IMG/VR virus record: IMGVR_UViG_3300019776_000324
Coordinates: 280,245 to 344,244 of that record
Length of the DNA: 64,000 bases
Direction: 5' to 3' (one strand)
Within the stretch, counting starts at the first letter, position 1. Each line of letters starts with the position of its first letter. The notes beneath the pieces were generated by a model. That model made no database searches and was not told the DNA's origin. It worked only from the letters and a program-made list of their open reading frames with translations. The translations under genes were made by a program, and so were the position numbers. Positions 13,437-40,817 of the stretch are shown piece after piece.

Positions 13437-13465
13437 TTGCAAAATCTAAATAAACCAGTTATAAT
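13437..13465 (+). promoter_or_regulatory. sigma70 promoter with an embedded late TAAATA motif
   Basis: TTGCAA-17-TATAAT. Confidence 0.6.
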
Positions 13466-13484
13466 CAACAACAAGGAGAATTAC

Positions 13485-17013: not shown

Positions 17014-17546
17014 TGATTAGAGATGGGCACGATGATGTAAGTTTCTTTGTAGGAACTGAAGTAGAACACACTCCTGCATTTGGACAAATTACATTATTTG
17101 TAGTAGGCTTACAGTCTATAGCAGATATTAAGAACGCACTTAAGACACACCGTGCTCTAGGCGGATACCTTGTTACCCATATATATTTTGGTGCTAACCA
17201 AAGTTTTCCTAACCCAGAATATAGTGATGCTCCTACCTGGCGTGATTGGGAAGGAATGATTAATACATTCTTGCAAGACGGATACTTATGCACACTTGAT
17301 ATTGATGTAAAGTGTGTAGAAGGCCTGCTTGAATCTCCGTTGGTGGAATACCACAACTTTATTCCAATGATTTCTATTAAACTCCCTTATATTAACCAAC
17401 TTGGATACAATGCAACTATTAAACTTGATGACAAAGATTTTAAAGCAACCAACCCGGGCGTCTGGTGCCACTCGCTACACAGCTTACAAAAGCGCGAGGT
17501 GTTTACTGACTGGTCTAAATACACAAAGGACGAAGTAATTAAATGA
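17013..17546 (+). CDS. Hypothetical protein in the TGT-like block
   Basis: 177-aa ORF coupled to both neighbours. Confidence 0.65.
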   Translation: MIRDGHDDVSFFVGTEVEHTPAFGQITLFVVGLQSIADIKNALKTHRALGGYLVTHIYFGANQSFPNPEYSDAPTWRDWEGMINTFLQDGYLCTLDIDVKCVEGLLESPLVEYHNFIPMISIKLPYINQLGYNATIKLDDKDFKATNPGVWCHSLHSLQKREVFTDWSKYTKDEVIK

Positions 17547-18007
17547 TACAAGAACAACGAGAAACAATAGAGAGAATTAAATCCGCAGCCAATCGTAAGA
17601 TATGGGTTACTTTCCAGCGAGAAGGTATTCACTGCTATCCTGCGGCAGCAACAGATCCTGCGTTAAATACTAACGATGAATACAATGTTGCGTTCCTTGC
17701 TAGCCCTCACCGTCATATCTTTCACTTTAGGGTGTCAATCAATGTCTTCCACAATGACCGAGACATTGAGTTCATCCAGTTCAAACGCTGGCTCGAGAAC
17801 TTATACAGTGGGACCGGTCCCTATAATGAAAATCGAGTTTTAGAACTCAACTACAAGTCCTGCGAAATGATTGCAGACGACTTGTACTTACAAATTGCAG
17901 GCCGCTATCCTGGTCGTGCTGTAGAAATCGAAGTGTCCGAAGACGGCGAGAACGGATGCTTGATTAGTTATAACCTTACTCGTCCAACACAATCAATTGT
18001 AATTTAA
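17543..18007 (+). CDS. QueD/PTPS-like T-fold protein (second, divergent copy)
   Basis: H.Y..A...HRHIFHFRV..DRDIEF..K..L and C-terminal SCEMIA..EV.EDGE pattern. Confidence 0.6.
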   Translation: MIQEQRETIERIKSAANRKIWVTFQREGIHCYPAAATDPALNTNDEYNVAFLASPHRHIFHFRVSINVFHNDRDIEFIQFKRWLENLYSGTGPYNENRVLELNYKSCEMIADDLYLQIAGRYPGRAVEIEVSEDGENGCLISYNLTRPTQSIVI

Positions 18008-20392: not shown

Positions 20393-20979
20393 GCTTTCAA
20401 GCCTTATTTGATTTTGAATCTACTCTAGCTGAATATACCGGTGCACCATATGTTGTATTAACAGATGGTTGCACCCATGCTCTTGAACTTTGTTTTAGAC
20501 ACGACAATATCAAACAAACAGCGTTTACTCCATATACCTATCTGAGTGTTCCTATGCTTATGCATCACTTGGGAATCAAATACGATTATCACACTCAAGA
20601 ACATAGACAACAATGGGTCGGGGAATACAAGTTTGAAGGTACTCGTATTTGGGACAGTGCCCGCAGACTTGAGCGCAATATGTATCGCCCAGGACAGTTT
20701 CAATGTTTAAGTTTTGGTTGGTCTAAACCTTTGCAACTAGGCAAGGTTGGTGCTATACTGTTAGACGATGAGCTAGCATACAAAAAGTTCAGTCGACAAC
20801 GAGCAGACGGTCGCGATCTACATGTTGCTTGGGAAACTGAAACAGACCTAATACTAGGTTATCATTACTGCCCAACATTAGAATTGTGTGCTAAGGGATT
20901 AGAATTGTTACCAACTGTAGAACCAAAATCACAACCTGGAGTTTATCCTGATTGCAGAAATATTTCATTTGCCTCTTGA
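20389..20979 (+). CDS. Short DegT/DnrJ/EryC1/StrS-like PLP aminotransferase
   Basis: LTDGCTHAL, WDSA, SFGWSKPL..G..GAI; only 196 aa. Confidence 0.65.
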   Translation: MSFQALFDFESTLAEYTGAPYVVLTDGCTHALELCFRHDNIKQTAFTPYTYLSVPMLMHHLGIKYDYHTQEHRQQWVGEYKFEGTRIWDSARRLERNMYRPGQFQCLSFGWSKPLQLGKVGAILLDDELAYKKFSRQRADGRDLHVAWETETDLILGYHYCPTLELCAKGLELLPTVEPKSQPGVYPDCRNISFAS

Positions 20980-21049: not shown

Positions 21050-21847
21050 TTGACAACATTTACATCAGAAGATCGAAACAACGCTACTAAACTAGTAGAT
21101 GAAGCACCGTTCCATCCTGGATACGAAGATGCCGCAGTAAATCCTAACGAAAGCGGTCGTCCACTTAGCGTGGTAATTCGCGAACAAATGAAGCTTAGAG
21201 GCAAACGCTTTTGGGCAGGTGATAATGTATCTGAATACATTACACAAGAATCAGACAAAGAAATGCTTATCAACGAAGCTACACAGGCTTTTGAAAAGGT
21301 ATTAGACACCTTGTTGATTGATCGTGAAAATGATCCTAACAGTAAGGGCACAGCTCGTCGTTTGGCTAAGATGTATTATAATGAAATTATGGCAGGTAGA
21401 TATGAGAAGGCACCAGATGCTACTGCTTTTCCAAATGATAGTGAGGATAGATATGAAGGTATGTTGGTTGTACGCAGTGAATTGCGTTCTATGTGTAGTC
21501 ATCATCATCAGCCAGTTAGCGGGGTGGCCTATATTGGCATCATCGCAGCAAACAAACTCATTGGTCTTAGCAAGTATACTCGCATTGCTCAATGGTGTGC
21601 TCGCCGTGGCACTTTACAAGAAGAGTTATGTAACGACATCGCAAGAGAAATAATGAAGGCTACAGATTCACAGAATGTTGGCGTGTATATTCAAGCAACA
21701 CATGGTTGCTGTGAGAATCGCGGCATTATGGCACACAGTAGTTTAACACAAACTACAGTACTTAAAGGTGTGTTCAACACAGATCCAGCAACTAAGAAAG
21801 AGTTTATGGACAATATTAAATTACAACAGGAGTTTGCCCCAAGATGA
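21050..21847 (+). CDS. folE: GTP cyclohydrolase I (TTG start)
   Basis: SMCSHH, GLSK..R, LQE, HGC..RG motifs. Confidence 0.95.
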   Translation: MTTFTSEDRNNATKLVDEAPFHPGYEDAAVNPNESGRPLSVVIREQMKLRGKRFWAGDNVSEYITQESDKEMLINEATQAFEKVLDTLLIDRENDPNSKGTARRLAKMYYNEIMAGRYEKAPDATAFPNDSEDRYEGMLVVRSELRSMCSHHHQPVSGVAYIGIIAANKLIGLSKYTRIAQWCARRGTLQEELCNDIAREIMKATDSQNVGVYIQATHGCCENRGIMAHSSLTQTTVLKGVFNTDPATKKEFMDNIKLQQEFAPR

Positions 21848-25430: not shown

Positions 25431-25937
25431 ATGAACTACACCGGATCAAGACCTTACAAATATACAAGTACTAAAGAATATCACGATGCATTTCCTTGCG
25501 CTTATCGTCAATGGAGAGCAGATAGTCACTGCAACTTGATTCATGGCTACTCATTTAGCATGAAGTTTTACTTTGGCACAGACGACTTAGATGTGCGTAA
25601 CTGGGCTGCTGACTACGGCGGACTCAAAGAACTCAAAGGTATCCTTGAAAGTCAATTTGATCATACCTTACTAGTAGCAGAAGATGATCCTGAACTAGAA
25701 ACATACAAGTTATTACAAGAAAAGAATCTTGCTAAACTAACTATACTACCTAAGCTAGGTTGCGAAGGTCTAGCAGATCAATTGTACAAGTTTGTAAATG
25801 GTGTTTATATTCCAGACATGTGGGGTCAATCAGAAGCAGATCGCTTGTGGTGCTATCGTGTGGAAGTTCGCGAAACAATGTCTAACATGGCATATCGCGA
25901 AGGACATCGTGAATGGAATGAAGATCTCTTCGAATAA
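25431..25937 (+). CDS. queD: 6-carboxytetrahydropterin synthase
   Basis: HCNLIHGYS, DYGGLK, FDHTLL motifs. Confidence 0.85.
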   Translation: MNYTGSRPYKYTSTKEYHDAFPCAYRQWRADSHCNLIHGYSFSMKFYFGTDDLDVRNWAADYGGLKELKGILESQFDHTLLVAEDDPELETYKLLQEKNLAKLTILPKLGCEGLADQLYKFVNGVYIPDMWGQSEADRLWCYRVEVRETMSNMAYREGHREWNEDLFE

Positions 25938-26243: not shown

Positions 26244-27062
26244 ATGTCAAATGAATACAAAATATCTATTTTATTGCCCACACGAGGGCGCACAAAAGCA
26301 CTGGATCGAAGCCTAATAGGTTTATTAGAAAAAGCCTCGGACCTCAGCAGTATCCAGTTACTGTTAGGATTGGATTCCGACGACTCTATAGGAGTTGAAC
26401 ATTTTCAAAATGAACTACAACCTAAATTAGATGACATGGGCATTGATTACACTGCCATGTTGTTTAGTCCAATGGGTTATGGTCGCCTGAATGAATACAT
26501 TAACAAACTAGCTGAAAATTCTTCTGCTGATTGGTTATTCTTTTGGAATGACGATGCAATCATGGAAACCACGGATTGGGATCTAGAGATTACCAAGCAC
26601 ACTGGCGAATTTAAATTATTAGCTGTACATACTCACAATGATCATCCATACAGCATTTTCCCAATCGTACCTAAAGAGTGGTTGGATGTCATTGGTCATT
26701 TAAGTTTACACTCAATGACTGATGCTTGGTTGAGCCAAATTGCATACTGTGTGGATATTTGGGAACGAATTGATATTGATGTATTACACGACCGTGCAGA
26801 CTTAACTGGCAACAATCAAGATGCTACCTACAAACAAAGAGAACTGCTCGAAGGCAATCCTAATAATCCTAGAGACTTCCATCACCCTGCACAGACCATG
26901 TTGCGTATGAAAGAATGCGATATACTAGACAACTATCTTAAAAGCATCGGAAAAGGTAGCGATTGGTGGGATCGTGTTAAATCAGGAGATCAAGATCCTT
27001 GGGACCGATTGAAAGAAAACGACATTAATAAACAAATGGTTCAGTTCCAATTAAAAAAATAA
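26244..27062 (+). CDS. Glycosyltransferase family 2 (GT-A)
   Basis: ISILLPTRGR, DSDD, FFWNDD. Confidence 0.8.
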   Translation: MSNEYKISILLPTRGRTKALDRSLIGLLEKASDLSSIQLLLGLDSDDSIGVEHFQNELQPKLDDMGIDYTAMLFSPMGYGRLNEYINKLAENSSADWLFFWNDDAIMETTDWDLEITKHTGEFKLLAVHTHNDHPYSIFPIVPKEWLDVIGHLSLHSMTDAWLSQIAYCVDIWERIDIDVLHDRADLTGNNQDATYKQRELLEGNPNNPRDFHHPAQTMLRMKECDILDNYLKSIGKGSDWWDRVKSGDQDPWDRLKENDINKQMVQFQLKK

Positions 27063-27065
27063 CTT

Positions 27066-28115
27066 ATGACTAACAAACAAAAAACTATACTTGTAACAGG
27101 CGGTGCTGGATTTATCGGACACCATATGATTCGTCGTTTACTCAAGCACGAAGAATATCGAATTATCTCAATGGATCGACTAGACTTTTCTGGCAATCTT
27201 AATCGCTTGCACGAACTAAGTCAAGAGTTTGGCACCGATGCAATGAGTCGTTTGCGTGTGATTTTTCACGATCTTCGTGCAGAAATTAATCCACAACTAG
27301 CACATCAGATTGGTCCTGTGGATTACATTATTCATATGGCCGCTGGTAGTCATGTCACACGATCAATTGAGAATCCCATGTTGTTTGTACAGGACAATGT
27401 GGTTGGTACTTGTAACCTATTAGAATATGCTCGTAAGTATTTGCCCAACTTGGAAAAGTTTATTAACTTTGGCACCGACGAAGTGTTTGGATCGGCTCCA
27501 GAAGGTGTAGAATACAAAGAATACGATCGTTACAACAGTCGTAGTCCTTACAGTGCTACTAAAGCTGGCGCAGAAGAATTATGTGTATGCTACGAAAATA
27601 CCTATAACATGCCTATCTACTGTACACACACAATGAATGTGTTTGGTGAGCGTCAATTACCGGAGAAGTTTATTGGTATTGCTATGCGCAAGATACTTGC
27701 TGGGGAAGAAGTTACTATCCACTGTGATGAAGAAACAGGAACCAAGAGTGGATTGCGTCACTGGGTTCATGCTGCCGATGTTGCTGATGCTACTATGTTT
27801 ATCATGGACTTGCCTCATAAAGGCTTTCCACTTGCTGATGACTTTGGCGGTGCTACATGTCCTAAGTTCAACATTGTAGGGCAACAAGAAGTTTCTAACT
27901 TTGATGTAGCACAAAAGATTGCCGACATCCTGGGCAAGGAATTAAAGCACACAATGATTGGCTACGATACACAACGCCCAGGGCATGATTTCCGTTATGC
28001 ACTCAGCGGAGAGTATATGAAGAAGTTAGGTTGGGAACCCAAGTACGACTTTGAAACACGCATTGAACAAATGGTTCTTTGGACATTGAAGAATGATCGC
28101 TGGTTAAAAATATGA
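27066..28115 (+). CDS. NDP-hexose 4,6-dehydratase (RmlB-like)
   Basis: TGGAGFIG, AAGSHV.RS, TDEVFG, YSATK, RPGHD.RY. Confidence 0.85.
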   Translation: MTNKQKTILVTGGAGFIGHHMIRRLLKHEEYRIISMDRLDFSGNLNRLHELSQEFGTDAMSRLRVIFHDLRAEINPQLAHQIGPVDYIIHMAAGSHVTRSIENPMLFVQDNVVGTCNLLEYARKYLPNLEKFINFGTDEVFGSAPEGVEYKEYDRYNSRSPYSATKAGAEELCVCYENTYNMPIYCTHTMNVFGERQLPEKFIGIAMRKILAGEEVTIHCDEETGTKSGLRHWVHAADVADATMFIMDLPHKGFPLADDFGGATCPKFNIVGQQEVSNFDVAQKIADILGKELKHTMIGYDTQRPGHDFRYALSGEYMKKLGWEPKYDFETRIEQMVLWTLKNDRWLKI

Positions 28116-29323
28116 AACATGTAACAGAAAATACACATTGCCTAGCGTGTGGGTCAGGCGACATACACACAGCACTAGATTTAGGCAAGCAACCTTTAGC
28201 AAACAGTTATAAAGATTCAGCAGACGAGCCAGAAGCACGATACCCACTGGGTGTTAGGCTATGTCGTAAGTGCTATCACTTGCAACTGAGTCACACTGTG
28301 GATCCCGAAATCATTTATAAAAACTACCTGTATGCTACTGGTACTAATCAAACTATCAAAGATTACTCAGCGTGGTTTGCTAACTTTTGTTTAGAGTCAT
28401 GTAATCGTGCCGGTACAGTGTTAGACATTGGTTGTAATGATGGTACTCAACTTGATTACTTCAAAGCACTTGGTGTCAAGACATATGGAATTGATCCTGC
28501 GGAAAATTTGCACTCTAGAAGTGGTGCCAATCACAATGTAGTATGCGATTTCTTTGGCCCGCAGGCTGTGGAAAAATTAAACACGGTCTACTATGATCTT
28601 ATCATAGCACAAAATGTATGTGCTCATAATCCAGATCCACGGGCATTTTTAGAATCATGCTATCAATTAATGGCCGATCATACTGTGTTGTTTGTACAGA
28701 CTAGCCAGGCTGACATGGTTCTACACAATGAATTTGATACTATCTATCACGAACATGTAAACTTTTTCAATGCTAATAGCATGAACGAACTGGCCAAACG
28801 AGTTGGTTTGCATCTGATTGATGTTATTAAAGCTCCTATTCATGGCAACAGTTATATTTTTATTTTAAGTAAACAGCCGTTTAACAAAAATCGTATTAGC
28901 AACATTATCGGACTTGAAGCGGCCTATGGACTGCTTGATGTAGAAACATATATCAAGTGGGAAAAGTATGTGCAGTCACTTGTTCGTAAATTAAAAGCAC
29001 AGATTAATGCTTATCGCAAAGATGGTTACGCTATTGCAGGTTATGGTGCTGCGGCCAAGGGTAATACCTTGCTGAATTTTACTGATATCAAACTTGATTT
29101 TATCATTGACGACAATCCGCTCAAGCAAGGAAAGTTTACGCCAGGTACTAGTTGTCCTATTGTTAGTATTGATCATCTTACAAAGTTTAAAAAGAAAGAC
29201 AAGATTTTGTTTATGCCCTTGGCTTGGAACTTCTTTCCAGAGATCAAGTCAAAAATTCAATCTGCTAGAAGCAATCCTAACGATCTCTTTATTCGTTATT
29301 TTCCACAGGTTGATGTACAATAA
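28112..29323 (+). CDS. NDP-hexose C-methyltransferase family protein
   Basis: N-terminal CxxC..CxxC zinc site; DIGCNDG; YHEH; GYGAAAKG.TL; DDNPLKQG. Confidence 0.85.
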   Translation: MKHVTENTHCLACGSGDIHTALDLGKQPLANSYKDSADEPEARYPLGVRLCRKCYHLQLSHTVDPEIIYKNYLYATGTNQTIKDYSAWFANFCLESCNRAGTVLDIGCNDGTQLDYFKALGVKTYGIDPAENLHSRSGANHNVVCDFFGPQAVEKLNTVYYDLIIAQNVCAHNPDPRAFLESCYQLMADHTVLFVQTSQADMVLHNEFDTIYHEHVNFFNANSMNELAKRVGLHLIDVIKAPIHGNSYIFILSKQPFNKNRISNIIGLEAAYGLLDVETYIKWEKYVQSLVRKLKAQINAYRKDGYAIAGYGAAAKGNTLLNFTDIKLDFIIDDNPLKQGKFTPGTSCPIVSIDHLTKFKKKDKILFMPLAWNFFPEIKSKIQSARSNPNDLFIRYFPQVDVQ

Positions 29324-30121: not shown

Positions 30122-30658
30122 ATGAAAAAAGTATATTACACTTGGCAGGATGTTGAAAATCAAACACAAGAAATTCTGCGTCAACTACAGCGTGATGCAT
30201 GGATGCCCGATTATGTTGTAGGGCTTACTAGAGGCGGACTTGTTCCAGCTAATCTTATTAGCCAATACTTAGAAGTGCCAATGGAAACACTCAAAGTAAG
30301 CCTGCGTGACGATGCTAGCCAACCCGAATCAAACTTATGGATGGCCGAAGATGCATACGGTCATGTAGATTATGATCCAATGTCAGGTGGTGATGGGCGT
30401 CAAAAGATTCTTATTGTAGACGACATCAATGATTCGGGTGCTACACTTAATTGGATTAAACAAGACTGGATGAGTAGTTGTATGCCTGGCGATCTAGAAC
30501 GCTGGAATCATGTATGGAACGATAATGTTCGTGTTGCTGTACTAGTTGATAACGAAGCCAGCGCCAGTGAATTAAATGTTAGATATTCAGCCATTGACCT
30601 AAATAAAGCTGAAGAAGATTGTTGGATTGTGTTTCCTTGGGAAGATTGGTGGAAGTGA
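30122..30658 (+). CDS. Type I phosphoribosyltransferase (purine PRTase-like)
   Basis: VVGLTRGGLVPA; ILIVDDINDSGATL PRPP loop. Confidence 0.85.
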   Translation: MKKVYYTWQDVENQTQEILRQLQRDAWMPDYVVGLTRGGLVPANLISQYLEVPMETLKVSLRDDASQPESNLWMAEDAYGHVDYDPMSGGDGRQKILIVDDINDSGATLNWIKQDWMSSCMPGDLERWNHVWNDNVRVAVLVDNEASASELNVRYSAIDLNKAEEDCWIVFPWEDWWK

Positions 30659-31335
30659 AAAGTATAGTATCTTTTGGCGATAGCTTTGTATTTGGCAGTG
30701 AACTAGCTGACAACAACGATGGCTCCAAGGCCTGGCCTGCGCTGGTGGCCAAAGAACTAGGATATTCTTATAATACATCTGCGGTTCCAGGGTGCGGCAA
30801 TGATCATATTGCTAGACAAATTTATACATGGTTTTCTAATAACTCACCTGAAAATACTCTAGCAGTGATCAACTGGACTTGGATGAGTCGTTGGGACTTT
30901 TATATTGTTGAGCACGAAACATGGATTACCTTAGGACCAACTTGTGTTCCAGAAAAACTCAAAGATTTAGTTGATCGTACACAAGCCGAAGACATGATTG
31001 ATTTTTATAAGACTCGAGCCAATAGTAGCTTGCTATGGAACAAGTTTAGAAACTTACAAACCATTTGGGCTGTGCAACAATACATGAATCACAAGGGTAT
31101 CAAGTCTGTACAAACTTACATGGACTATGAGTTGTTTGATCAAACCTTTCACGCACCGGATTATATTAAAGAACTACAACAATTAGTGTTACCAAAATTA
31201 CAATTATTTGATGATAAAAACTTTGTTGATTGGTCGCATGAACATGAATATCCTGTTACAATACAAGGGTGGCATCCGCTGGAACAAGCACATCAAGCGG
31301 CAGCAGAATATTGGAAAGATATTTACAAAATCTAA
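30655..31335 (+). CDS. SGNH/GDSL-like hydrolase paralog 1
   Basis: FGDSF..G; WP; A.PGCGND.I.R; HP...H. Confidence 0.55.
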   Translation: MKSIVSFGDSFVFGSELADNNDGSKAWPALVAKELGYSYNTSAVPGCGNDHIARQIYTWFSNNSPENTLAVINWTWMSRWDFYIVEHETWITLGPTCVPEKLKDLVDRTQAEDMIDFYKTRANSSLLWNKFRNLQTIWAVQQYMNHKGIKSVQTYMDYELFDQTFHAPDYIKELQQLVLPKLQLFDDKNFVDWSHEHEYPVTIQGWHPLEQAHQAAAEYWKDIYKI

Positions 31336-31343
31336 ATACTATT

Positions 31344-31550
31344 ATGAACATATACTATAGAGAATCAACATTGTTAGAACAAATAAATGATGCTATTAGC
31401 GACTGCGCTACTAGTAAAAAGCACATTGACTATTTTGAATTAACCAGCGAAGAACTTGCTTCTAATTGGACCAGTTTTGATAGAACCACAAATAATGGTA
31501 TCGATGTTAGATATTCCTATAAAGGTATTCCTATAAAGGTTAAAGAATGA
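31344..31550 (+). CDS. Hypothetical protein
   Basis: ATG after a CTAAATA motif. Confidence 0.5.
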   Translation: MNIYYRESTLLEQINDAISDCATSKKHIDYFELTSEELASNWTSFDRTTNNGIDVRYSYKGIPIKVKE

Positions 31551-32404
31551 AAATTAAAGTATCAGAATTATTTTATAGTTTACAAGGCGAAGGTCGCTTT
31601 GTTGGTGTGCCAAGTGTGTTCTTGCGTACATATGGATGTAACTTTAAGTGTGCAGGCTTTGGTTGCAAGCCAGGCGAAAAGTCAACAGGCGCAGATGAAG
31701 TTGCTAAAGAAGTCAGCAAGTATGATACATTCTTAAGTTTGCCATTGGTTGAAACTGGCTGCGATAGCTATGCTAGTTGGCATCCTGCATTTAAACATTT
31801 GAGTCCTACTGTTACTACAGAAGATCTAGTGGACCAGATGTTAGCATTAACTCCAAACAATTGTTGGGTACAGAACAACGGCAACGATGTACACTTGGTT
31901 ATCACAGGAGGCGAACCATTGCTAGGCTGGCAACGAGCTTACAAAGAGTTATTAGAGCATCCACGCATGGCAGACTTAAAGAACATTACATTCGAAACCA
32001 ATGGCACTCAAGAATTGCACGAAGATTTTAGACTGTATTTAGACTATTGGGCAAGCGATGGCGGACGAGAAGTTACATTTAGTGTTAGTGCTAAACTAAG
32101 TGCAAGTGGTGAAAAAGAAGAAGAAGCTATTCGCCCAGAGATTGTGCGTGTATATCAAGACTATGGACACACATATCTTAAGTTTGTTGTTGAAACCGAA
32201 GATCATGTCAACGAAGCTGTTCGTGCTGTAGATAAATTTCGTGCAGGCGGATTCGAAGGTGTTGTATATTTGATGCCACAAGGTGGAGTTGTTACTCCAT
32301 ATGATGCAAACAAATTAAACATTGCCAATATCTGTTGCGAGCGTGGATTCAACTATAGTCCTAGATTGCATGTGGATCTTTGGGGCAATGGCTGGGGCAA
32401 GTAA
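31547..32404 (+). CDS. queE: 7-carboxy-7-deazaguanine synthase (radical SAM)
   Basis: SELFYSLQGEG..G.PSVFLR..GCNFKC; CD; ITGGEPL; FETNG; PRLH..LWG. Confidence 0.85.
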   Translation: MKIKVSELFYSLQGEGRFVGVPSVFLRTYGCNFKCAGFGCKPGEKSTGADEVAKEVSKYDTFLSLPLVETGCDSYASWHPAFKHLSPTVTTEDLVDQMLALTPNNCWVQNNGNDVHLVITGGEPLLGWQRAYKELLEHPRMADLKNITFETNGTQELHEDFRLYLDYWASDGGREVTFSVSAKLSASGEKEEEAIRPEIVRVYQDYGHTYLKFVVETEDHVNEAVRAVDKFRAGGFEGVVYLMPQGGVVTPYDANKLNIANICCERGFNYSPRLHVDLWGNGWGK

Positions 32405-32661
32405 TGTTCCCACAAGGTTTATACGGAATGAACATAACAGGAATGTGGATGGACGAACAATACGACCCGTTTAATACTCGTGCAGAGTTTAAATCAGTTT
32501 ACTTAGTATGGCCAAGGCGTTGCCACATAACAGGTCGGCGATTATGGTTAACTCGCGCTTACAAAGGTACCGCAGTATGGACTGGTCCTGGCACACCTGT
32601 AGAAGAACATCGTTACTACGACGAAGTAGAATACTTAATAGAAAAGTTAAAAGGAAACTAA
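32404..32661 (+). CDS. Hypothetical protein
   Basis: TAATG-coupled ORF. Confidence 0.5.
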   Translation: MFPQGLYGMNITGMWMDEQYDPFNTRAEFKSVYLVWPRRCHITGRRLWLTRAYKGTAVWTGPGTPVEEHRYYDEVEYLIEKLKGN

Positions 32662-33414
32662 ATGTCATTGCAAGATCAAATTACAGCATGGATTAAAGAA
32701 TACGCCCACAAGGCTAATATGAAAACACTAGTAGTAGGCATTAGTGGTGGCATTGATAGTGCTGTAGTTAGTGCATTATGCGCACGAACTGGTCTGGATG
32801 TTGTTGCAGTGACCATGCCTATTCGTCAGCGTCCAGACTTGCACGATCTTAGTTTGCGTCAAGGATACTGGTTAAAGGCAAACTTTACCAATGTAAAACA
32901 CGAAGTGATTGATCTCACTGATGTGTTTGATACATTTGAAAATCGCATGGGCGAGTATAATGACCTGTTGGGATTTGCCAACAGTCGCAGTCGTTTGCGT
33001 ATGGTTACCTTGTATCAGATTGCACAAAGTACCGCAGGACTAGTAGTAGGTACAGGCAACAAGGTAGAAGATTTTGGTGTAGGATTTTATACCAAGTACG
33101 GCGATGGTGGTGTAGATATCAGTCCTATCGCTGACTGCTATAAAACTGAAGTATGGCAAATGGGCCGTGAGATGGGTGTGTTAGACGACATTATCAATGC
33201 CGCTCCTACAGATGGATTATGGGACGACGGACGCACAGATGAGGATCAAATTGGCATGAGCTATGCTGACTTAGAAATGGCCATGCGTATGTGTAACGGT
33301 GAAATGACTCCGTTAGGTGAGCCAACCGTAGTGGCAAAAATCAACAAGTTCCTTGAATTAAATGCCCGTAATGCACATAAAATGAATCCTATTCCTGTGT
33401 TTAAAAAATCTTGA
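32662..33414 (+). CDS. nadE: NH3-dependent NAD+ synthetase family protein
   Basis: SGGIDS; N.RSRLRM; GTGNK.E; GFYTKYGDG; DISPIAD.YKTEV; PTDGL. Confidence 0.85.
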   Translation: MSLQDQITAWIKEYAHKANMKTLVVGISGGIDSAVVSALCARTGLDVVAVTMPIRQRPDLHDLSLRQGYWLKANFTNVKHEVIDLTDVFDTFENRMGEYNDLLGFANSRSRLRMVTLYQIAQSTAGLVVGTGNKVEDFGVGFYTKYGDGGVDISPIADCYKTEVWQMGREMGVLDDIINAAPTDGLWDDGRTDEDQIGMSYADLEMAMRMCNGEMTPLGEPTVVAKINKFLELNARNAHKMNPIPVFKKS

Positions 33415-33475: not shown

Positions 33476-34732
33476 ATGAAAAAAATAGGATTTATCGGTA
33501 TTGGCAAACTCGGTCTTGATTGTGCCGAAGTGTTTGCAGAAAAACATGAAGTACGCGGTTACGACATTTACCCACGCACCAGCGACACAGTAAAAGTATG
33601 CAGTATCGAAGAATTAGTCAATGAAAGTGAGTGGATCTTTATTGCTGTTCCTACTCCACACTCAGAAGGCTATGATGGATCAGTTCCAAGCAGTCACATG
33701 ACTCCTAAGGACTTTGGCCACGATGCTGTTATTGATGCTATTAAAAATGTAAACAAATATGCAACCACACCTAAAAAGATAGTACTTATTAGTACAGTGT
33801 TGCCAGGAACTACTCGTAAGAAGTTTATTCCTTTGTTAGATACTAAACACGAATTCGTTTACAATCCTTATTTGATTGCTATGGGCTCAGTTAAGTGGGA
33901 CATGGTTAATCCAGAAATGATTATGTTGGGCACTGAAGACGGCAGCTTGACTGGTGTTGCTGGAGAACTCAAATCATTGTATGAAACAATCATGCAGAAC
34001 AATCCACGCTATGAAGTTGGCACATGGGACGAGTGCGAAGCAATTAAGATCTTCTATAACACATTTATCAGTGCCAAAGTTGGCATGGTAAACATGATTC
34101 AAGACTTTGCTCTTAAGATTGGCAATATCAATGTTGATGTGGTCACAAACGCATTGGCTCGTAGTACCATGCGTATCATGGGACCTAAGTACATGACAGC
34201 AGGTATGGGCGATGCCGGTGCTTGCCATCCACGCGATAATATTGCGTTGCGTTGGTTAGCTAGTGAATATGATATTGGTTACGACTTGTTTGATACTATC
34301 ATGCATGCTCGTGAAATCCAAGCAAAGAACTTAGCCGAGTTCCTGGTAAAGCAAGCAGAAAGTCAAATTACAGGCCGTAGTGTTCCTATTGCTATTCATG
34401 GTAAAGCATACAAACCAGATGTGCCTTACTGCATTGGGTCATACTCGACCTTGGTAGGACATTATGTTAAAGAGATGGGTCACAATGTAGTCTATCTTGA
34501 TCCGCTTGCTGATGATCAAACTGATGTAGTTGAAAAACTCAACGACGAATGCTATGTTGTATTGTGGGCACACAATCGTAAGATCACTTACGAATACACG
34601 GGTGACCAACAAGATACACAACCATACTGTGAAATTCCACAGGGTAGTGTAATCGTTGATCCTTGGCGTCAACTTGGCCTAACAGGCAAGCATACAATTA
34701 TTCACTACGGTAATACTAGAAACAATAGATAA
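33476..34732 (+). CDS. UDP-glucose/GDP-mannose dehydrogenase family protein
   Basis: GIGKLG; IAVPTP; STVLPGT; IKIFYN; GACHPRD; AYKPD. Confidence 0.85.
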   Translation: MKKIGFIGIGKLGLDCAEVFAEKHEVRGYDIYPRTSDTVKVCSIEELVNESEWIFIAVPTPHSEGYDGSVPSSHMTPKDFGHDAVIDAIKNVNKYATTPKKIVLISTVLPGTTRKKFIPLLDTKHEFVYNPYLIAMGSVKWDMVNPEMIMLGTEDGSLTGVAGELKSLYETIMQNNPRYEVGTWDECEAIKIFYNTFISAKVGMVNMIQDFALKIGNINVDVVTNALARSTMRIMGPKYMTAGMGDAGACHPRDNIALRWLASEYDIGYDLFDTIMHAREIQAKNLAEFLVKQAESQITGRSVPIAIHGKAYKPDVPYCIGSYSTLVGHYVKEMGHNVVYLDPLADDQTDVVEKLNDECYVVLWAHNRKITYEYTGDQQDTQPYCEIPQGSVIVDPWRQLGLTGKHTIIHYGNTRNNR

Positions 34733-35123: not shown

Positions 35124-35362
35124 TGGCTAAACCGTTATTAGTCGAACCATTTATCAAAGTCTACATGTTGTTAAAGCAAGATGGACTTTATTTGTATCCA
35201 GCTGGGTTCGATGCTAATAACAACATGGGCAGTGGTTTCTTTCCTACTCAAAATGTTGCAGAACTGATGCGTACAAAAGAGCTACTAGCACAAAAGCCAG
35301 ATAGTACAACACAGTATCACATATTTGAATTAGAGATCCCGAATCCAGCATATACACAATGA
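35123..35362 (+). CDS. Hypothetical protein
   Basis: Coupled ORF. Confidence 0.55.
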   Translation: MAKPLLVEPFIKVYMLLKQDGLYLYPAGFDANNNMGSGFFPTQNVAELMRTKELLAQKPDSTTQYHIFELEIPNPAYTQ

Positions 35363-35997
35363 TATTGTATGTAAACGGTGATAGCAACAGTTGTGGTGTA
35401 GAGCTAACTGATAAAAACTTGTCGTGGCCTGTTGTTCTTTCAAATCAACTTGATTTAAAATTAATCAATCAAGCTAAAACTGGTGCTAGTAATCCTAGAA
35501 TACTTAGAGTAACACAAGAATTTATTGAACAAAACTATAACAACTTGCAAGATTACTTTATAGTAATAGGGTGGACTGGTTGGGAACGAGAAGAGTGGCT
35601 ACACAATGGTGTATATTATGATGTTAATTCCAGCGGTCGTAGTGCGGTACCCAAAGAACTAGTAGATCAATACAAGGAATGGGTTGTAAATCAAAATCAA
35701 GAGTTGCGAGAATATAAATCTCTCGTGCTACAAGAAAACATTTTTAAATTACACCAAGAGCTTTGTAGTTTAAAAGTAAAACATTTATTTTTTAATGCAT
35801 TGATGCCGTTTTTACACAATACTAAAGTTTCGTGGGAGAAAAATTATCTAGGTCCATACACTAACGAATTAAGTTATTATTGGTATCTAAAAAATCACGG
35901 ATGGCATCCAACAAAAAACAATCACTATTTAGAAGATGCACAAATTATTTGGGCCAGCGTGTTAAAAAATTATATAGGAGATAACAAGTTACTATGA
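35359..35997 (+). CDS. SGNH/GDSL-like hydrolase paralog 2
   Basis: MILYVNGDS; ASN.RI.R; HP....H. Confidence 0.55.
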   Translation: MILYVNGDSNSCGVELTDKNLSWPVVLSNQLDLKLINQAKTGASNPRILRVTQEFIEQNYNNLQDYFIVIGWTGWEREEWLHNGVYYDVNSSGRSAVPKELVDQYKEWVVNQNQELREYKSLVLQENIFKLHQELCSLKVKHLFFNALMPFLHNTKVSWEKNYLGPYTNELSYYWYLKNHGWHPTKNNHYLEDAQIIWASVLKNYIGDNKLL

Positions 35998-36695
35998 TAT
36001 TATATGTAAACGGCGACAGCCATTCTGCTGCTGCAGAAGCAGTAAATCCACATGCGTTTGCCGAAGACGATGGGCAATTGTTTTACATGGGCCGTGCACC
36101 ACACCCAGAAAATTTAGCAGTAAGCTGGGGTAAGTTGCTGGGACTGGCACTAAACTGTGGATTCCATTGTGCTGCCGAAAGTGCAAGCAGTAACACTAGA
36201 ATACTTAGAACCACACGAGAATATATCAACACATCAACTGGCTACGACGATTCATTGATTATTATTCAATGGTCAACTTGGGAGCGTGAAGAGTGGTTGC
36301 ACAACGGCACATACTATCAAGTTGGCAGTAGTGGCATTGATGATGTTCCACAAGAGTTACAAGAAAAGTATCGACACTTTGTAATCGGCACTGACTGGGA
36401 ACTAAAAACCCAACAAGCTCACACGGAAATTTGGGAGTTCCATAAAGAGCTAGAAGCAAAAGGTATCAAACACATTTTCTTCAATGGTAATAACCATTTT
36501 AGTTCTATACAAGATCAAAAGGACTGGGGTCGTAGTTATATCGGCCCATATGATCCTGCCCTAACCTATGATTCGGTAATTCGGGCCAAAGGTATCAACA
36601 CAGTAGCACCCAATTCATGGCATTTTGGTAAAGATGGCCATAGCTATTTCCACCGTTTTATGTTACAATACATTATTGACAACAAATTTATCTAA
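35994..36695 (+). CDS. SGNH/GDSL-like hydrolase paralog 3
   Basis: MILYVNGDS; SSN.RI.R; WEREEWLHNG shared with paralog 2. Confidence 0.55.
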   Translation: MILYVNGDSHSAAAEAVNPHAFAEDDGQLFYMGRAPHPENLAVSWGKLLGLALNCGFHCAAESASSNTRILRTTREYINTSTGYDDSLIIIQWSTWEREEWLHNGTYYQVGSSGIDDVPQELQEKYRHFVIGTDWELKTQQAHTEIWEFHKELEAKGIKHIFFNGNNHFSSIQDQKDWGRSYIGPYDPALTYDSVIRAKGINTVAPNSWHFGKDGHSYFHRFMLQYIIDNKFI

Positions 36696-37878: not shown

Positions 37879-38327
37879 CACTAGTAGCTAAACCCGTAGT
37901 AGATAAACAATATTGGATTTTACAAAAAGACAATCAAAAAGTTGGCAATGTAGAAGCATGTGCAGGTGGTTATCAAGTTAAAATTAATAATCAAGTTGCA
38001 CAGTTTAAAACTATTAAAATGGTTGAACAAAGAGTCAACATTCAGTTCCAACATTTTCCCAAGCCTATCAAAACAAAGCCCGCAGTAAATTTAGTACACG
38101 GATATCCAACTAGTGGTCGTGTGTACAATCCCATGTGGGACCTGCAACAAAAGCTACCTATCTATACAAAGACAAACAAATCAAAATCATGGTTTGCCGC
38201 TGGCTGGTATCGTGTCAAGAAAGGTCGCAATTGGGCCACAGTTCAAGATCCAAAATTAATTGTAGTTCAACGATATCCATACCAAGGCCCATACTATACC
38301 CGAGAGGAAGCAGAAAACAATGACTAA
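37875..38327 (+). CDS. Hypothetical protein
   Basis: Coupled ORF. Confidence 0.6.
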   Translation: MTLVAKPVVDKQYWILQKDNQKVGNVEACAGGYQVKINNQVAQFKTIKMVEQRVNIQFQHFPKPIKTKPAVNLVHGYPTSGRVYNPMWDLQQKLPIYTKTNKSKSWFAAGWYRVKKGRNWATVQDPKLIVVQRYPYQGPYYTREEAENND

Positions 38328-38682
38328 CCCATTTCGCGATCAAGAGAAGTTTATGAAGGCCTGTGATCAATCAGTAGGCAACATAAATCTAGAACAGTAT
38401 CAACTTTATTGTAATTTGATCAAAGAAGAATTTGACGAACTATGTGCCAGCGACAACATTGTTGATGACCTGGATGCACTAATTGATATCTTAGTTGTTA
38501 CTATTGGTGCTATTCATAGCTTGGGTGCAGATGGCGAAGGCGCATGGAAAGAAGTAATGCGTACCAACTTTGCCAAGATCGACAGCGAAACTGGCAAGGT
38601 GCGCAAGCGTGAAGATGGCAAGGTCTTAAAGCCTGTAGGCTGGACACCACCTAACCTGGAACCGTTTACCAAGATCAAATGA
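38320..38682 (+). CDS. All-alpha NTP pyrophosphohydrolase (MazG/PRA-PH-like)
   Basis: LIKEE..E; DALID; N.AK; DGKVLKP. Confidence 0.75.
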   Translation: MTNPFRDQEKFMKACDQSVGNINLEQYQLYCNLIKEEFDELCASDNIVDDLDALIDILVVTIGAIHSLGADGEGAWKEVMRTNFAKIDSETGKVRKREDGKVLKPVGWTPPNLEPFTKIK

Positions 38683-39818: not shown

Positions 39819-40817
39819 ATGTCTAAACGCACAGTAAAATGGCTTATCGCGCATCAACCAGAAGAGTTGTTTGTTCGTACAGCTACAGCCTTCTCACAAG
39901 AATTAAACAAACTTATTGGAGATGAGCTTGAGATTGAAATTTTAACTTATCCTAGTTACGCCGCAAAATACGGCGAAATCAAAGATCTAGAAAAATTGGC
40001 TTATTTTGATGAGCCAGAATACACTAATCACACAGCCGAAGGTAGTCTATGGGCCAAAGGCATTGATGCTTTTTGGAACGCTATGACAACCGGCGAGATC
40101 GAAATGAGCCAAATGCAAGTTGGACAGATCAGCAAATTTAACTATGACTTTGCTGCTTTAGATTTGCCATTCTTATTTGACGACCACGAGCATGTTAGCC
40201 GTGTTGTTGATGGAGAAATTGGTGCTGAACTTTGCCGTCAATTAGGCGAAAAGAGTTCTATCAAAGGCCTAGCATTTACATACTCAGGTGGATATCGTGT
40301 TATTGGTAGTAACGAATCTATCTGCTCATTAGAAGAGTTAGAAGGTCGTAAAGTTATTATTGAACAACCATTGAGTCTTGGTTATGCAATTGAAAAAATT
40401 GGAGCTGAAACTGTAGAGTTGGCACCAAACTTATGGCGTAAACTAGATCCAGTTGGCAATGGCCAAGCTGACGCAGTTGAAACTACCTATTTGCGTTTTA
40501 ATGGTAGCCATGTTCTCAAGACAAACCACAGCGTGTTTATGACTACTATTGTTGTAAGTAACCAGTTCTGGAATACATTGACAGAAGTACAACAAGCTGC
40601 ATTCCAAGCTGCTGCTCGTGTTGCTAGTCAAACTGAAAGACAGTGGGCATTGGATGATGCAGATCGTTATGAAGCTGAAGCTCAAGCTAAAGGTATTACT
40701 ATTACTGACATCAGTGAACAAGATGCTGCTCGTTTAAAGAAAGCTAGTCAACAAACTTATCTTCGCGTAAACGATATGTTTAGCAAGGGCTTGTTGGGTC
40801 GTATTCGTAAAGCCTAA
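39819..40817 (+). CDS. TRAP transporter solute-binding protein (DctP-like)
   Basis: DLPFLFDD.EH; G.R.I; LEGRK; H; VS..FW..L...QQ; no obvious signal peptide. Confidence 0.75.
   Translation: MSKRTVKWLIAHQPEELFVRTATAFSQELNKLIGDELEIEILTYPSYAAKYGEIKDLEKLAYFDEPEYTNHTAEGSLWAKGIDAFWNAMTTGEIEMSQMQVGQISKFNYDFAALDLPFLFDDHEHVSRVVDGEIGAELCRQLGEKSSIKGLAFTYSGGYRVIGSNESICSLEELEGRKVIIEQPLSLGYAIEKIGAETVELAPNLWRKLDPVGNGQADAVETTYLRFNGSHVLKTNHSVFMTTIVVSNQFWNTLTEVQQAAFQAAARVASQTERQWALDDADRYEAEAQAKGITITDISEQDAARLKKASQQTYLRVNDMFSKGLLGRIRKA

What the first reader, a model, noticed from the sequence alone, without database searches (positions are those of the whole stretch)
31547..33414. No QueC in view, but a NadE-family amidotransferase sits one ORF from queE
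Seen: no QueC or QueF in this window; queE is followed by a small ORF and then nadE. Known: NadE converts a carboxylate to an amide through an acyl-adenylate, the same chemistry as the first QueC half-reaction (CDG to ADG). Inference: either NadE is repurposed to make ADG, or it restores NAD+ against NAD-depleting defences by a route distinct from known phage NAD salvage pathways.
Basis: inference. Interest (0 to 1): 0.6.

Follow-up and report, generated by a model that had tools for sequence, protein, structure and literature searches.

The report
Ordinary phage NAD synthetase beside queE
The gene next to queE in this 344-kb jumbo phage looks like a normal NAD+ synthetase that sits there only in this phage lineage, and the missing QueC is better explained by a CDG decarboxylase homologue (DpdL) 14 kb upstream.

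Summary
A QueE-like radical SAM gene (31547-32404), a 93-aa ORF (32380-32661) and a NadE gene (32662-33414) lie in a row. The complete 344,244-bp phage genome has no QueC or QueF.

The reading that NadE replaces QueC is not supported, for four reasons:
- The closest cellular relatives of this NadE (47-60% identity) are the only NAD synthetase gene in Pelagibacteraceae, Flavobacteriia and Neisseria genomes.
- All 27 published ATP, Mg and NaAD contact positions have the same residue, or the same small set of residues, in the phage and those housekeeping enzymes.
- The same NadE clade occurs in five other phage gene contexts without queE beside it. In sister jumbo phages the deazapurine backbone is intact and NadE lies 60-80 kb away.
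- Phages with the same QueC-less deazapurine module (Cellulophaga phiST, Synechococcus BUCT-ZZ01) have no NadE.

The window also encodes a DpdL homologue (17543-18007) with the LxxxHRHxF signature. DpdL is the proposed CDG decarboxylase of phiST-type 7-deazaguanine genomes, and it accounts for the absent QueC.

NadE is most likely an ordinary NAD+-making auxiliary gene. An anti-defence role is possible but untested. A side lead is a type I phosphoribosyltransferase that travels with the QueC-less module.

The parts
32662..33414 (+). nadE: single-domain NH3-dependent NAD(+) synthetase, 250 aa, PP-loop S28-G-G-I-D-S33
   Evidence: PF02540 at 1.1e-48; TIGR00552 at 176.7 bits (cut-off 63.65). PHROG 11189 'NAD synthetase' at 1.3e-83. 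Model pLDDT 92.3, and the top 50 PDB fold matches are all NAD or NMN synthetases. The 27 contact residues match housekeeping NadE.
31547..32404 (+). QueE-like radical SAM enzyme (CDG synthase type of phages), 285 aa, with an unusual cysteine spacing C31-x3-C35-x36-C72
   Evidence: PHROG 2076 at 1.3e-53. Best PDB sequence hits are QueE (6nhl, 4njg, 5tgs) but cover mainly the N-terminal ~40 residues, with weak second stretches at 115-157. C31, C35, C72, QGEG and GGEP are invariant in 38 homologues. 36-47% identical to the QueE genes of KVP40/nt-1-type Vibrio phages and BUCT-ZZ01.
32380..32661 (+). Small conserved ORF (93 aa by the TTG start), function unknown, between queE and nadE
   Evidence: No Pfam, NCBIfam or PHROG hit. 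Homologues occur in many related loci but at varying places, for example after the dehydrogenase in L073, L081, L083 and L085. It is therefore not a fixed partner of NadE.
33476..34732 (+). NDP-sugar 6-dehydrogenase-like gene (UDP-glucose/GDP-mannose dehydrogenase family), 418 aa
   Evidence: PF00984/PF03721; TIGR03026 at 136 bits, below its cut-off of 189.8. PHROG 9148 at 7.2e-88. It follows NadE in 62 of 78 lineage loci. It follows NadE directly in three T4-like marine phages and one gene later in Bellamy.
30122..30658 (+). Type I phosphoribosyltransferase (XPRT/HGPRT-like), 178 aa; a conserved companion of the deazapurine genes
   Evidence: PF00156 at 7e-16. This family is found in only 6 of 50,697 phage records: five records of phiST-group Cellulophaga phages and BUCT-ZZ01, where it abuts queE. 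It stays next to queE in sister jumbo phages that have NadE elsewhere.
17543..18007 (+). DpdL homologue (proposed 7-carboxy-7-deazaguanine decarboxylase), 154 aa, motif L52-ASP-H-R-H-I-F60
   Evidence: blastp 32% identity, E=7e-16 to phiST CGPG_00067, which is DpdL. The signature LxxxHRHxF is as defined in PMC10516641 and occurs only once in the six frames of the genome.
21050..21847 (+). folE, GTP cyclohydrolase I (start codon uncertain; the domain begins at residue 79)
   Evidence: PF01227 at 8.8e-41. Single copy in the genome.
25431..25937 (+). QueD-like T-fold enzyme (phage type, CxxxHGY), 168 aa
   Evidence: PF01242 at 6.2e-13. PHROG 2389 at 1.2e-34. The same HGY variant is seen in phiST and BUCT-ZZ01 QueD.
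38320..38682 (+). MazG/PRA-PH-like NTP pyrophosphohydrolase, 120 aa
   Evidence: PF01503 at 1.5e-5. In related loci it lies directly beside queE/PRT (L092, L093, L098, L216). phiST has a gene annotated MazG-like inside its deazaguanine cluster, but no homology between it and this gene was detected.

Best explanation
The 250-aa protein is an orthodox single-domain NH3-dependent NAD(+) synthetase. It adenylates the carboxylate of a nicotinate nucleotide with ATP and replaces AMP with ammonia. The substrate is most likely deamido-NAD, giving NAD+. The gene was taken from bacteria of the SAR11/Flavobacteriia type and now circulates among large aquatic phages as an auxiliary metabolic gene that tops up NAD+ in the infected cell.

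It is not part of the deazapurine pathway. Its place one ORF after queE is a rearrangement specific to this jumbo-phage lineage.

The absence of QueC is explained by a different route, like that of Cellulophaga phage phiST: FolE, QueD and QueE make CDG, and a DpdL homologue (17543-18007) is the candidate for decarboxylating it to 7-deazaguanine.

Shown here: family membership, residue identity with housekeeping enzymes, phylogeny, gene-context dissociation, presence of DpdL.
Inferred: the substrate, the benefit to the phage, and the final DNA base.
For: 1. Family: above the curated cut-offs of PF02540 and TIGR00552. The AlphaFold model has pLDDT 92.3, and its top 50 PDB fold matches are all NAD or NMN synthetases, with no QueC.

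2. Orthology: cellular relatives at 47-60% identity are found in Pelagibacteraceae, many Flavobacteriia and Neisseria. In five such genomes this is the only full-length NAD_synthase gene, so it is the housekeeping enzyme.

3. Tree: the jumbo-phage NadEs, phage HTVC008M and chromosomal SAR11 NadE form one clade (SH-aLRT 98) with no long branch.

4. Active site: at all 27 ATP, Mg and NaAD contact positions of De Ingeniis 2012 Table S4, the 34 phage sequences carry the same residue, or the same small set of residues, as the 73 SAR11/Flavobacteriia-type sequences. This includes the contacts to the adenylate half of NaAD (N107, R111, Y118, D152, H239, K240) and to the nicotinate ring (F142, Y143, T144, L186).

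5. Context:
- The same clade (57-71% identity) sits in four other contexts in metagenomic phage contigs: Bax1-I/cell-wall hydrolase/SOD; AAA-ATPase/VWA; a TPP-enzyme and aminotransferase sugar cluster; and a cytidylyltransferase-like neighbour.
- A fifth context is the sugar clusters of T4-like marine phages, whose NadEs are 52-56% identical.
- Outside the window's lineage, 0 of 21 loci have queE within 3 kb.
- In sister jumbo phages the backbone DpdL...FolE-QueD-PRT-QueE-o126-Exo is intact, with NadE 60-80 kb away.
- NadEs next to queE and remote from queE are interleaved in the tree.

6. Reverse dissociation: BUCT-ZZ01 and phiST carry FolE/QueD/QueE/DpdL/PRT with no NadE and no QueC. phiST DNA is reported as fully dDG-substituted (PMC10516641).

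7. The four T4-like phages with this NadE have no QueE-like gene.
Against: - No enzyme assay exists for this sub-clade, so NaAD against NaMN preference is open. The best fold match is the Francisella NMN synthetase 3fiu.
- NadE lies next to a NAD-dependent NDP-sugar dehydrogenase in this lineage and in four T4-like phages. This recurrent neighbourhood is not explained by a plain cofactor-supply role.
- The phage has no recognisable NaMN-forming enzyme: no NAPRTase/NAMPT family. Its two NadM-like nucleotidyltransferases are of unresolved specificity. It therefore depends on host supply of NaAD.
- Within the lineage the queE-nadE adjacency is perfectly conserved, with no terminator-like site between the genes, so co-expression is likely.
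- DpdL's decarboxylase activity is itself only proposed; the authors could not reconstitute it.
Confidence: 0.8

Rival explanations
1. NadE acts as an NMN synthetase (NaMN to NMN), as in Francisella tularensis, and feeds a phage NadM-like adenylyltransferase. It is still NAD+ biosynthesis, but by the amidated-mononucleotide order of steps.
For: The best fold match is Francisella NMN synthetase 3fiu (TM 0.83/0.87, rmsd 2.4), which is also the second best sequence match. The genome has two ORFs with the NadM-type GRFxPxHxGH motif (G000 272866-273624 and 264879-265718). The NMN synthetase/NadM pairing is described in PMC3376133.
Against: The residues that contact the AMP half of NaAD are all kept. 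However, N, R, Y and D at four of these six positions are also kept in the Francisella enzyme in the stretch aligned, so this does not discriminate. The closest relatives are sole NadEs of bacteria expected to use the NaAD route. The NadM-like ORFs score far below the NMNAT cut-offs.
Confidence: 0.12
2. NadE amidates the uronic acid made by the neighbouring NDP-sugar 6-dehydrogenase, giving an NDP-uronamide sugar for a phage-directed glycan.
For: A NadE-dehydrogenase pair is found in this lineage (62 of 78 loci). It is also found in HTVC008M, S-SSM7 and P-TIM68 (adjacent) and Bellamy (one gene apart), always inside sugar clusters, with dehydrogenases only 28-56% identical to each other. A further metagenomic contig has NadE, DegT, an acetyltransferase, GT2 and a dehydrogenase. 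The chemistry is the same (carboxylate to amide through an acyl-adenylate).
Against: There is no change at any nicotinate- or NaAD-contact position compared with housekeeping NadE. Sixteen lineage loci and all group B, C and E contexts keep NadE without a dehydrogenase nearby. Known uronamide pathways use AsnB-like amidotransferases, not NadE (my own knowledge, not tested here).
Confidence: 0.06
3. One reading: NadE replaces QueC's first half-reaction and converts CDG, or the CDG ribonucleotide made by the adjacent phosphoribosyltransferase, to the 7-amido derivative, giving dADG-type DNA.
For: There is no QueC in a complete genome. The adjacency is conserved within the lineage, with probable co-transcription with PRT and queE. 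NadE and QueC share the PP-loop fold and acyl-adenylate chemistry. A CDG ribonucleotide would resemble NaMN, being an aromatic carboxylate on ribose 5-phosphate (inference). Campylobacter phages are reported to stop at CDG yet carry dADG.
Against: A DpdL homologue supplies a published alternative fate for CDG. The module works without NadE in phiST and is present without it in BUCT-ZZ01. Sister jumbo phages keep the module with NadE 60-80 kb away. NadE occurs in phages with no queE. There are no active-site changes and no branch acceleration.
Confidence: 0.04

Closest known systems
Housekeeping single-domain NadE of Pelagibacteraceae and Flavobacteriia (archaeal-type short NADS; solved relatives P. 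horikoshii 2e18, H. pylori 1xng, F. tularensis 3fiu)
   Same: 47-60% identity, the same length of about 250 aa and the same fold. The same residues, or the same small sets of residues, are found at 27 ATP, Mg and NaAD contact positions, including the clade-specific D184 and Q196.
   Different: It is encoded by a phage and lies in a deazapurine and sugar gene island. No biochemical data exist for this sub-clade.
Phage NAD synthetases already annotated (PHROG 11189): Pelagibacter phage HTVC008M, Synechococcus phages S-SSM7, S-SSM6a, Bellamy, Sf-FS3 and S-SCSM2R, Prochlorococcus phage P-TIM68
   Same: 49-56% identity over the full length. The four whose surroundings were examined (HTVC008M, S-SSM7, P-TIM68, Bellamy) also have a nearby NDP-sugar dehydrogenase in a sugar cluster.
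   Different: Those are T4-like phages of 147-244 kb. The four examined have no QueE-like gene. Here the host genome is a 344-kb jumbo phage and queE is the upstream neighbour.
QueC and QueC* (preQ0 synthase and the proposed ADG synthase of phages)
   Same: PP-loop ATP pyrophosphatase superfamily, and activation of a carboxylate through an acyl-adenylate. The Pfam QueC model touches residues 24-86.
   Different: Only the PP-loop matches: TIGR00364 scores 27.5 bits against a cut-off of 150.3. There is no Cys-rich zinc site; the protein has only C40, C159 and C211. No QueC appears among the top 50 fold matches.
phiST-type 2'-deoxy-7-deazaguanine (dDG) system: FolE, QueD, QueE, DpdL, DpdA3, no QueC (Cui et al. 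2023, PMC10516641)
   Same: FolE, HGY-type QueD, a QueE-like enzyme, DpdL with LxxxHRHxF, no QueC, and a PRTase of the same family. Both also have a MazG-like pyrophosphatase gene (different Pfam/annotation basis; no mutual homology detected).
   Different: No DpdA3/TGT-like gene was detected. The genes are spread over about 21 kb and interleaved with sugar-nucleotide genes. The QueE is of the KVP40/BUCT-ZZ01 type, not detectably similar to phiST QueE by tblastn.
Phage NAD+ reconstitution pathways NARP1, NARP2 and NARP3
   Same: They would also raise NAD+ in the infected cell.
   Different: Different enzymes and substrates: NARP1 uses Adps and Namat on ADPR, NARP2 uses Nampt and Nmnat on nicotinamide, and NARP3 uses PnuC and a NadR-like enzyme on nicotinamide riboside. 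The genome has no NAPRTase/NAMPT-family gene and no PnuC. NadE acts on the deamidated branch and does not recycle the cleavage products of NADases. The term NadE does not occur in the NARP3 paper, the one NARP paper whose text I searched.

Membership tests
NH3-dependent NAD(+) synthetase (NadE; PF02540 / TIGR00552) | Scores above the curated family cut-offs over the full length | tested here: met
   PF02540 scores 166 bits (cut-off 21). TIGR00552 scores 176.7 bits (cut-off 63.65), residues 3-245 against model 5-241 of 251. The narrower equivalog NF010587 scores 190 bits, below its cut-off of 255.
NH3-dependent NAD(+) synthetase (NadE; PF02540 / TIGR00552) | PP-loop SGGxDS plus the ATP and Mg ligands (Bacillus subtilis numbering: D50, E162, K186, T208, R139, T157, D173) | tested here: met
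   S28-GGID-S33, D32, E136, K161, T183, R113, T131 and D148 are invariant in 34 phage and 73 closely related cellular sequences.
NH3-dependent NAD(+) synthetase (NadE; PF02540 / TIGR00552) | Residues that contact deamido-NAD (adenine, A-ribose, pyrophosphate, N-ribose, nicotinate ring) | tested here: met
   N107, R111, Y118, I/L127, F142, F/Y143, T144, D152, L186, H239 and K240 are kept. D184 and Q196 differ from P. horikoshii but are identical in the sole NadE of SAR11 and Flavobacteriia.
NH3-dependent NAD(+) synthetase (NadE; PF02540 / TIGR00552) | NadE fold | tested here: met
   Model pLDDT 92.3, pTM 0.91. TM-scores are 0.75-0.87 to 3fiu, 1xng, 2e18 and 1nsy.
NH3-dependent NAD(+) synthetase (NadE; PF02540 / TIGR00552) | Catalyses NaAD + ATP + NH3 to NAD+ | not testable with these tools
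   Needs an enzyme assay or complementation.
QueC (7-cyano-7-deazaguanine synthase; PF06508 / TIGR00364) | Full-length match above the curated cut-off | tested here: not met
   TIGR00364 scores 27.5 bits against 150.3. The Pfam QueC match covers only model positions 3-61 of 210, which is the shared PP-loop.
QueC (7-cyano-7-deazaguanine synthase; PF06508 / TIGR00364) | C-terminal cysteine cluster that binds zinc (feature recalled from the B. subtilis QueC structure, not looked up here) | tested here: not met
   The protein has only three scattered cysteines (C40, C159, C211) and no CxxC motif.
phiST-type QueC-less 7-deazaguanine system (PMC10516641) | FolE, QueD and QueE present, QueC absent | tested here: met
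phiST-type QueC-less 7-deazaguanine system (PMC10516641) | DpdL: a QueD-like T-fold protein with LxxxHRHxF in place of CxxxHGH | tested here: met
   Window 17543-18007 carries LASPHRHIF and matches phiST DpdL at E=7e-16.
phiST-type QueC-less 7-deazaguanine system (PMC10516641) | DpdA3 (a distant TGT homologue) to put the base into DNA | tested here: inconclusive
   No hit with PF01702 or PF20314 at E<=1, and none by tblastn with phiST DpdA3. DpdA3 was originally found only by HHpred, so a divergent copy may have been missed.
phiST-type QueC-less 7-deazaguanine system (PMC10516641) | dDG in virion DNA | not testable with these tools
   Needs nucleoside LC-MS/MS.
NARP1 / NARP2 / NARP3 phage NAD+ reconstitution | Marker genes: NAMPT/Namat-family transferase (NARP1 and NARP2); PnuC plus a NadR-like enzyme (NARP3) | tested here: not met
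   PF04095 gives no hit at E<=1. PF04973 gives no hit. The kinase-nucleotidyltransferase fusion has the opposite domain order to NadR and only weak NMNAT similarity.

The most novel reading that the evidence does not exclude
In the lineage where NadE lies between queE and the dehydrogenase, it may also accept the 7-carboxy-7-deazaguanine ribonucleotide made by the neighbouring phosphoribosyltransferase. That molecule is an aromatic carboxylate on ribose 5-phosphate, much like NaMN. NadE would then give a 7-amido-7-deazaguanine nucleotide at the nucleotide-pool level, without QueC and without a DpdA transglycosylase.
Probability: 0.04. Interest if true: 0.75.

Novelty: new member of a known kind. 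Interest (0 to 1): 0.2.

Why it matters
For the finding as given, little. NAD synthetase genes are already annotated in marine T4-like phages and have their own PHROG family, and this one shows no sign of a new function. Its value is as a caution: gene adjacency inside a phage island of auxiliary genes, even when conserved in dozens of metagenomic contigs, can reflect a single rearrangement.

Two things are worth keeping:
- No NadE-based route is among the three described phage NAD+ reconstitution pathways. A direct test against NAD-depleting defences would be cheap and new.
- The surrounding genes extend the QueC-less, DpdL-type 7-deazaguanine system to 344-kb freshwater jumbo phages and to a cultured cyanophage (BUCT-ZZ01). 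They also reveal a phosphoribosyltransferase that travels with the system. This bears on the open question of whether complete G replacement is made before or after replication.

Tried and rejected
- Megablast of the region against 50,697 phage records found no near relative.
- Domain fusions of NadE relatives, sought as Rosetta-stone evidence, were uninformative or probable gene-calling artefacts: GIY-YIG, CoaE, a Stealth fragment, unannotated extensions.
- The search for homologous proteins returned only members of the same lineage at over 75% identity. The 50%-representative search and the collection scans were needed to get further.
- Two encoding-contig look-ups gave contigs too short to be informative. 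One 2-kb contig has NadE-HIT-PTPS, a single instance that I could not extend.
- DpdA search: Pfam TGT, DUF6610 and tblastn with phiST DpdA3 were all negative. The 256-aa ORF 13437-14207, which has the same length as DpdA3, turned out to be a PCNA/gp45-like sliding clamp.
- DpdA3 has too few detectable relatives among the phage records to build a profile.
- The two NadM-like ORFs could not be assigned. NMNAT models score 16-25 bits and PDB hits are at E 0.005-0.2. The atlas places the fusion in a viral APS-kinase and cytidylyltransferase family of unknown role.
- I first thought the QueD-like protein was degenerate (CxxxHGY, and AAH changed to CAY). I rejected this because phiST and BUCT-ZZ01 QueD carry the same variant.
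- Literature: no paper in the library links CDG to a phosphoribosyltransferase in phages. The Francisella NMN synthetase paper (PMC2651253) and the Campylobacter phage paper (PMC6854489) are not held, so I could not check specificity-determining residues for NaMN against NaAD.
- The promoter and terminator scan gave counts no higher than shuffled sequence. Only one strong promoter-like site (11 of 12 matches) stands out, just upstream of the PRTase.
- Reads tools and the complex prediction were not used. Nothing in the argument depends on expression or on protein-protein binding.
Full report
WHAT IS THERE

The window is the last 64 kb of a single 344,244-bp contig with direct terminal repeats. 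The contig is a complete jumbo-phage genome of 40.5% G+C.

On the + strand lie three genes in a row:
- a 285-aa QueE-like radical SAM gene (31547-32404)
- a 93-aa ORF with no family match (32380-32661)
- a 250-aa NadE gene (32662-33414)

The QueE-like protein is far from the cellular QueE models (37-45 bits against cut-offs of 200-300). It matches PHROG 2076 'QueE-like radical SAM domain' over its full length at 1.3e-53. C31, C35, C72, QGEG and GGEP are invariant in 38 homologues, which gives an unusual CX3C-X36-C spacing.

The QueC model hits only the PP-loop of NadE itself, and QueF hits nothing.

IS NadE AN ORDINARY NadE?

It passes the curated cut-offs of PF02540 and TIGR00552. Its AlphaFold model (pLDDT 92.3) matches only NAD or NMN synthetases among the top 50 PDB chains.

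A scan of 185,579 species genomes found relatives at 47-60% identity in Pelagibacteraceae, many Flavobacteriia, Neisseria/Snodgrassella, Desulfobacteraceae and marine archaea. In five of these genomes the relative is the only full-length NAD_synthase gene. It must therefore be their housekeeping enzyme.

In a maximum-likelihood tree the jumbo-phage NadEs form one clade (SH-aLRT 98) with phage HTVC008M and chromosomal SAR11 NadE. No long branch separates them.

I mapped the ATP, Mg and NaAD contact residues listed for eleven NAD synthetases of known structure in Table S4 of De Ingeniis et al. 2012 onto the window protein, using the alignment to P. horikoshii 2e18. All 27 positions carry the same residue, or the same small set of residues, in 34 phage sequences and 73 SAR11/Flavobacteriia-type sequences. 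The two positions that differ from P. horikoshii (D184, Q196) are identical in those housekeeping enzymes. The contacts to the adenylate half of NaAD (N107, R111, Y118, D152, H239, K240) are invariant. A free base such as CDG would have no use for them. There is thus no sequence sign of a changed substrate.

IS NadE TIED TO queE?

In the window's own lineage, yes. All 51 related viral contigs with enough upstream sequence have queE directly before NadE. These loci share one synteny, however, so they count as one event.

The same NadE clade (57-71% identity) sits in quite different surroundings in other metagenomic phage contigs:
- between a Bax1-I-like membrane protein and a cell-wall hydrolase, with a superoxide dismutase nearby
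- between an AAA ATPase and a VWA/metallopeptidase protein, near thymidylate synthase
- ahead of a TPP-enzyme and aminotransferase sugar cluster
- beside a small cytidylyltransferase-like gene

In none of 21 such loci is queE within 3 kb.

Three large contigs of sister jumbo phages are the clearest case. They keep the backbone DpdL-GT-SDR-DegT-FolE-QueD-GT-PRT-(MazG)-QueE-o126-DUF6071-Exo. NadE and the dehydrogenase are missing from between QueE and o126, and NadE lies 60-80 kb away. In the tree, NadEs next to queE and NadEs remote from it are interleaved.

The closest cultured relatives (49-56% identity) are T4-like marine phages. The four whose regions I examined (HTVC008M, S-SSM7, P-TIM68, Bellamy) carry NadE in sugar clusters and have no QueE-like gene.

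WHAT REPLACES QueC?

Cui, Hutinet and colleagues (PMC10516641) described phages that encode FolE, QueD and QueE but not QueC. These phages carry DpdL, a QueD-like protein with LxxxHRHxF in place of CxxxHGH. The authors proposed that it decarboxylates CDG to 7-deazaguanine. Cellulophaga phage phiST, the type case, has all its G replaced by dDG.

The window ORF 17543-18007 is 32% identical to phiST DpdL (E=7e-16). It carries LASPHRHIF, the only occurrence of that motif in the six frames of the genome.

The freshwater cyanophage BUCT-ZZ01 has the closest cultured QueE (47% identity). It carries queE, a phosphoribosyltransferase, one hypothetical gene, queD and folE in a row, with two more hypothetical genes and then a DpdL homologue downstream. 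It has no QueC and no TGT, and it was not among the NadE hits.

The QueC-less module therefore exists, and in phiST works, without NadE. Together with NadE in phages that have no queE, this is a double dissociation.

MOST LIKELY MECHANISM

NadE makes NAD+ from host-supplied deamido-NAD, using ATP and ammonia. It is an auxiliary gene that large aquatic phages acquired from bacteria and pass among themselves.

The alternative order of steps (NaMN to NMN, as in Francisella, followed by a NadM-type adenylyltransferase) cannot be excluded. The Francisella enzyme is the best fold match, and the genome has two NadM-like ORFs of unresolved specificity.

The genome has no NAPRTase/NAMPT-family gene, no PnuC and no NAD-dependent ligase. 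It therefore has none of the markers I tested for the published phage pathways NARP1, NARP2 and NARP3. A role against NAD-depleting defence is conceivable, but nothing here bears on it. NadE also does not recycle ADPR or nicotinamide, the products of those defences.

ONE PATTERN NOT FULLY EXPLAINED

An NDP-sugar 6-dehydrogenase follows NadE in 62 of 78 lineage loci. It also follows NadE in four T4-like phages: directly in three, and one gene later in Bellamy. This suggests a rival, that NadE amidates a uronic acid. I rate it low for two reasons. The nicotinate and NaAD contacts are unchanged, and many phages keep NadE without any dehydrogenase nearby.

VERDICT

The ADG interpretation is not supported, and the NAD+ interpretation is supported only as ordinary enzymology. 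The finding is a new member of a known kind (phage NAD synthetase, PHROG 11189).

The more interesting material lies around it. This is a phiST-type, DpdL-bearing deazapurine module in a jumbo phage, without a detectable DpdA. It is accompanied by a type I phosphoribosyltransferase that occurs in only six of 50,697 phage records, all of them QueC-less DpdL phages.

Noticed in passing
window 17543-18007 (+): A DpdL homologue (proposed CDG decarboxylase) with the exact LxxxHRHxF signature. It extends the phiST-type QueC-less 7-deazaguanine system to 344-kb jumbo phages. The cultured Synechococcus phage BUCT-ZZ01 has one too (L130:14394-14726).
   Followed up: yes
window 30122-30658 (+); also L130:9855-10316 and L211:6995-7423: A type I phosphoribosyltransferase (XPRT-like) occurs in only 6 of 50,697 phage records: five records of phiST-group Cellulophaga phages and BUCT-ZZ01. 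All are QueC-less DpdL phages. It abuts queE in BUCT-ZZ01 and in the jumbo phages. No DpdA was detectable here. Together with the MazG-like gene, this hints that the deazapurine may enter DNA through the nucleotide pool, not by a transglycosylase. I found no paper on this.
   Followed up: partly
window 38320-38682 (+); L092, L093, L098, L216: A MazG/PRA-PH-like pyrophosphohydrolase moves around within the module and lies directly beside queE or the PRTase in several related contigs. phiST also has a gene annotated MazG-like in its deazaguanine cluster, though tblastn found no similarity between the two. It may clear dGTP or GTP.
   Followed up: partly
window 31547-32404 (+): The QueE-like enzyme has its three invariant cluster cysteines spaced CX3C-X36-C, with a roughly 35-residue insert between the second and third. 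This differs from the CX3CXfC and CX14CX2C spacings I recall for solved QueEs.
   Followed up: partly
window 25431-25937 (+): The QueD-like protein has CxxxHGY and CAY where E. coli QueD, as I recall it, has CxxxHGH and AAH. Two of the three presumed zinc histidines are therefore tyrosines. The same variant is in phiST and BUCT-ZZ01 QueD, so it is a phage QueD type, not a decayed gene.
   Followed up: partly
G000:C1:264879-265718 (+) and 272866-273624 (+), 7-15 kb upstream of the window: Two ORFs have a NadM-type GRFxPxHxGH nucleotidyltransferase motif. One is fused behind an APS-kinase-like P-loop domain, the reverse order to NadR. The fusion family is widespread in viruses and lies about 3 kb from NadE in another phage group (L113:6918-7721). 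Its function is unresolved and may be NAD-related.
   Followed up: partly
window 18150-20979, 26244-29323, 33476-34732: Sugar-nucleotide genes are interleaved with the deazapurine genes: a GT1-like gene, two SDR epimerase/dehydratases, a short DegT fragment of 196 aa, a GT-A glycosyltransferase, a sugar C-methyltransferase and an NDP-sugar dehydrogenase. Their content varies between related contigs. The target of the glycan (virion, host surface or DNA) is unknown.
   Followed up: no
window 30619-31335, 35359-35997, 35994-36695 (+): Three paralogous DUF6071/GDSL-like (SGNH hydrolase-like) ORFs flank the queE-nadE-dehydrogenase block. All score below the Pfam cut-off.
   Followed up: no
window 39819-40817 (+) and 42081-42971 (+): The phage encodes two periplasmic solute-binding proteins: a TRAP-type DctP family protein and a TctC tripartite tricarboxylate receptor family protein. 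These look like auxiliary nutrient-uptake genes.
   Followed up: no
window 8692-9741 (+) and many places in related contigs: A radical SAM/SPASM protein of about 350-450 aa belongs to a large paralogous set. Related jumbo contigs carry up to eight weak radical SAM matches each.
   Followed up: no
L072 (2,175-bp metagenomic contig): A NadE of 60% identity is followed by a HIT-family gene and a PTPS/QueD-like gene. This is the only case outside the window lineage where NadE lies near a deazapurine-type gene. The contig is too short to interpret.
   Followed up: no
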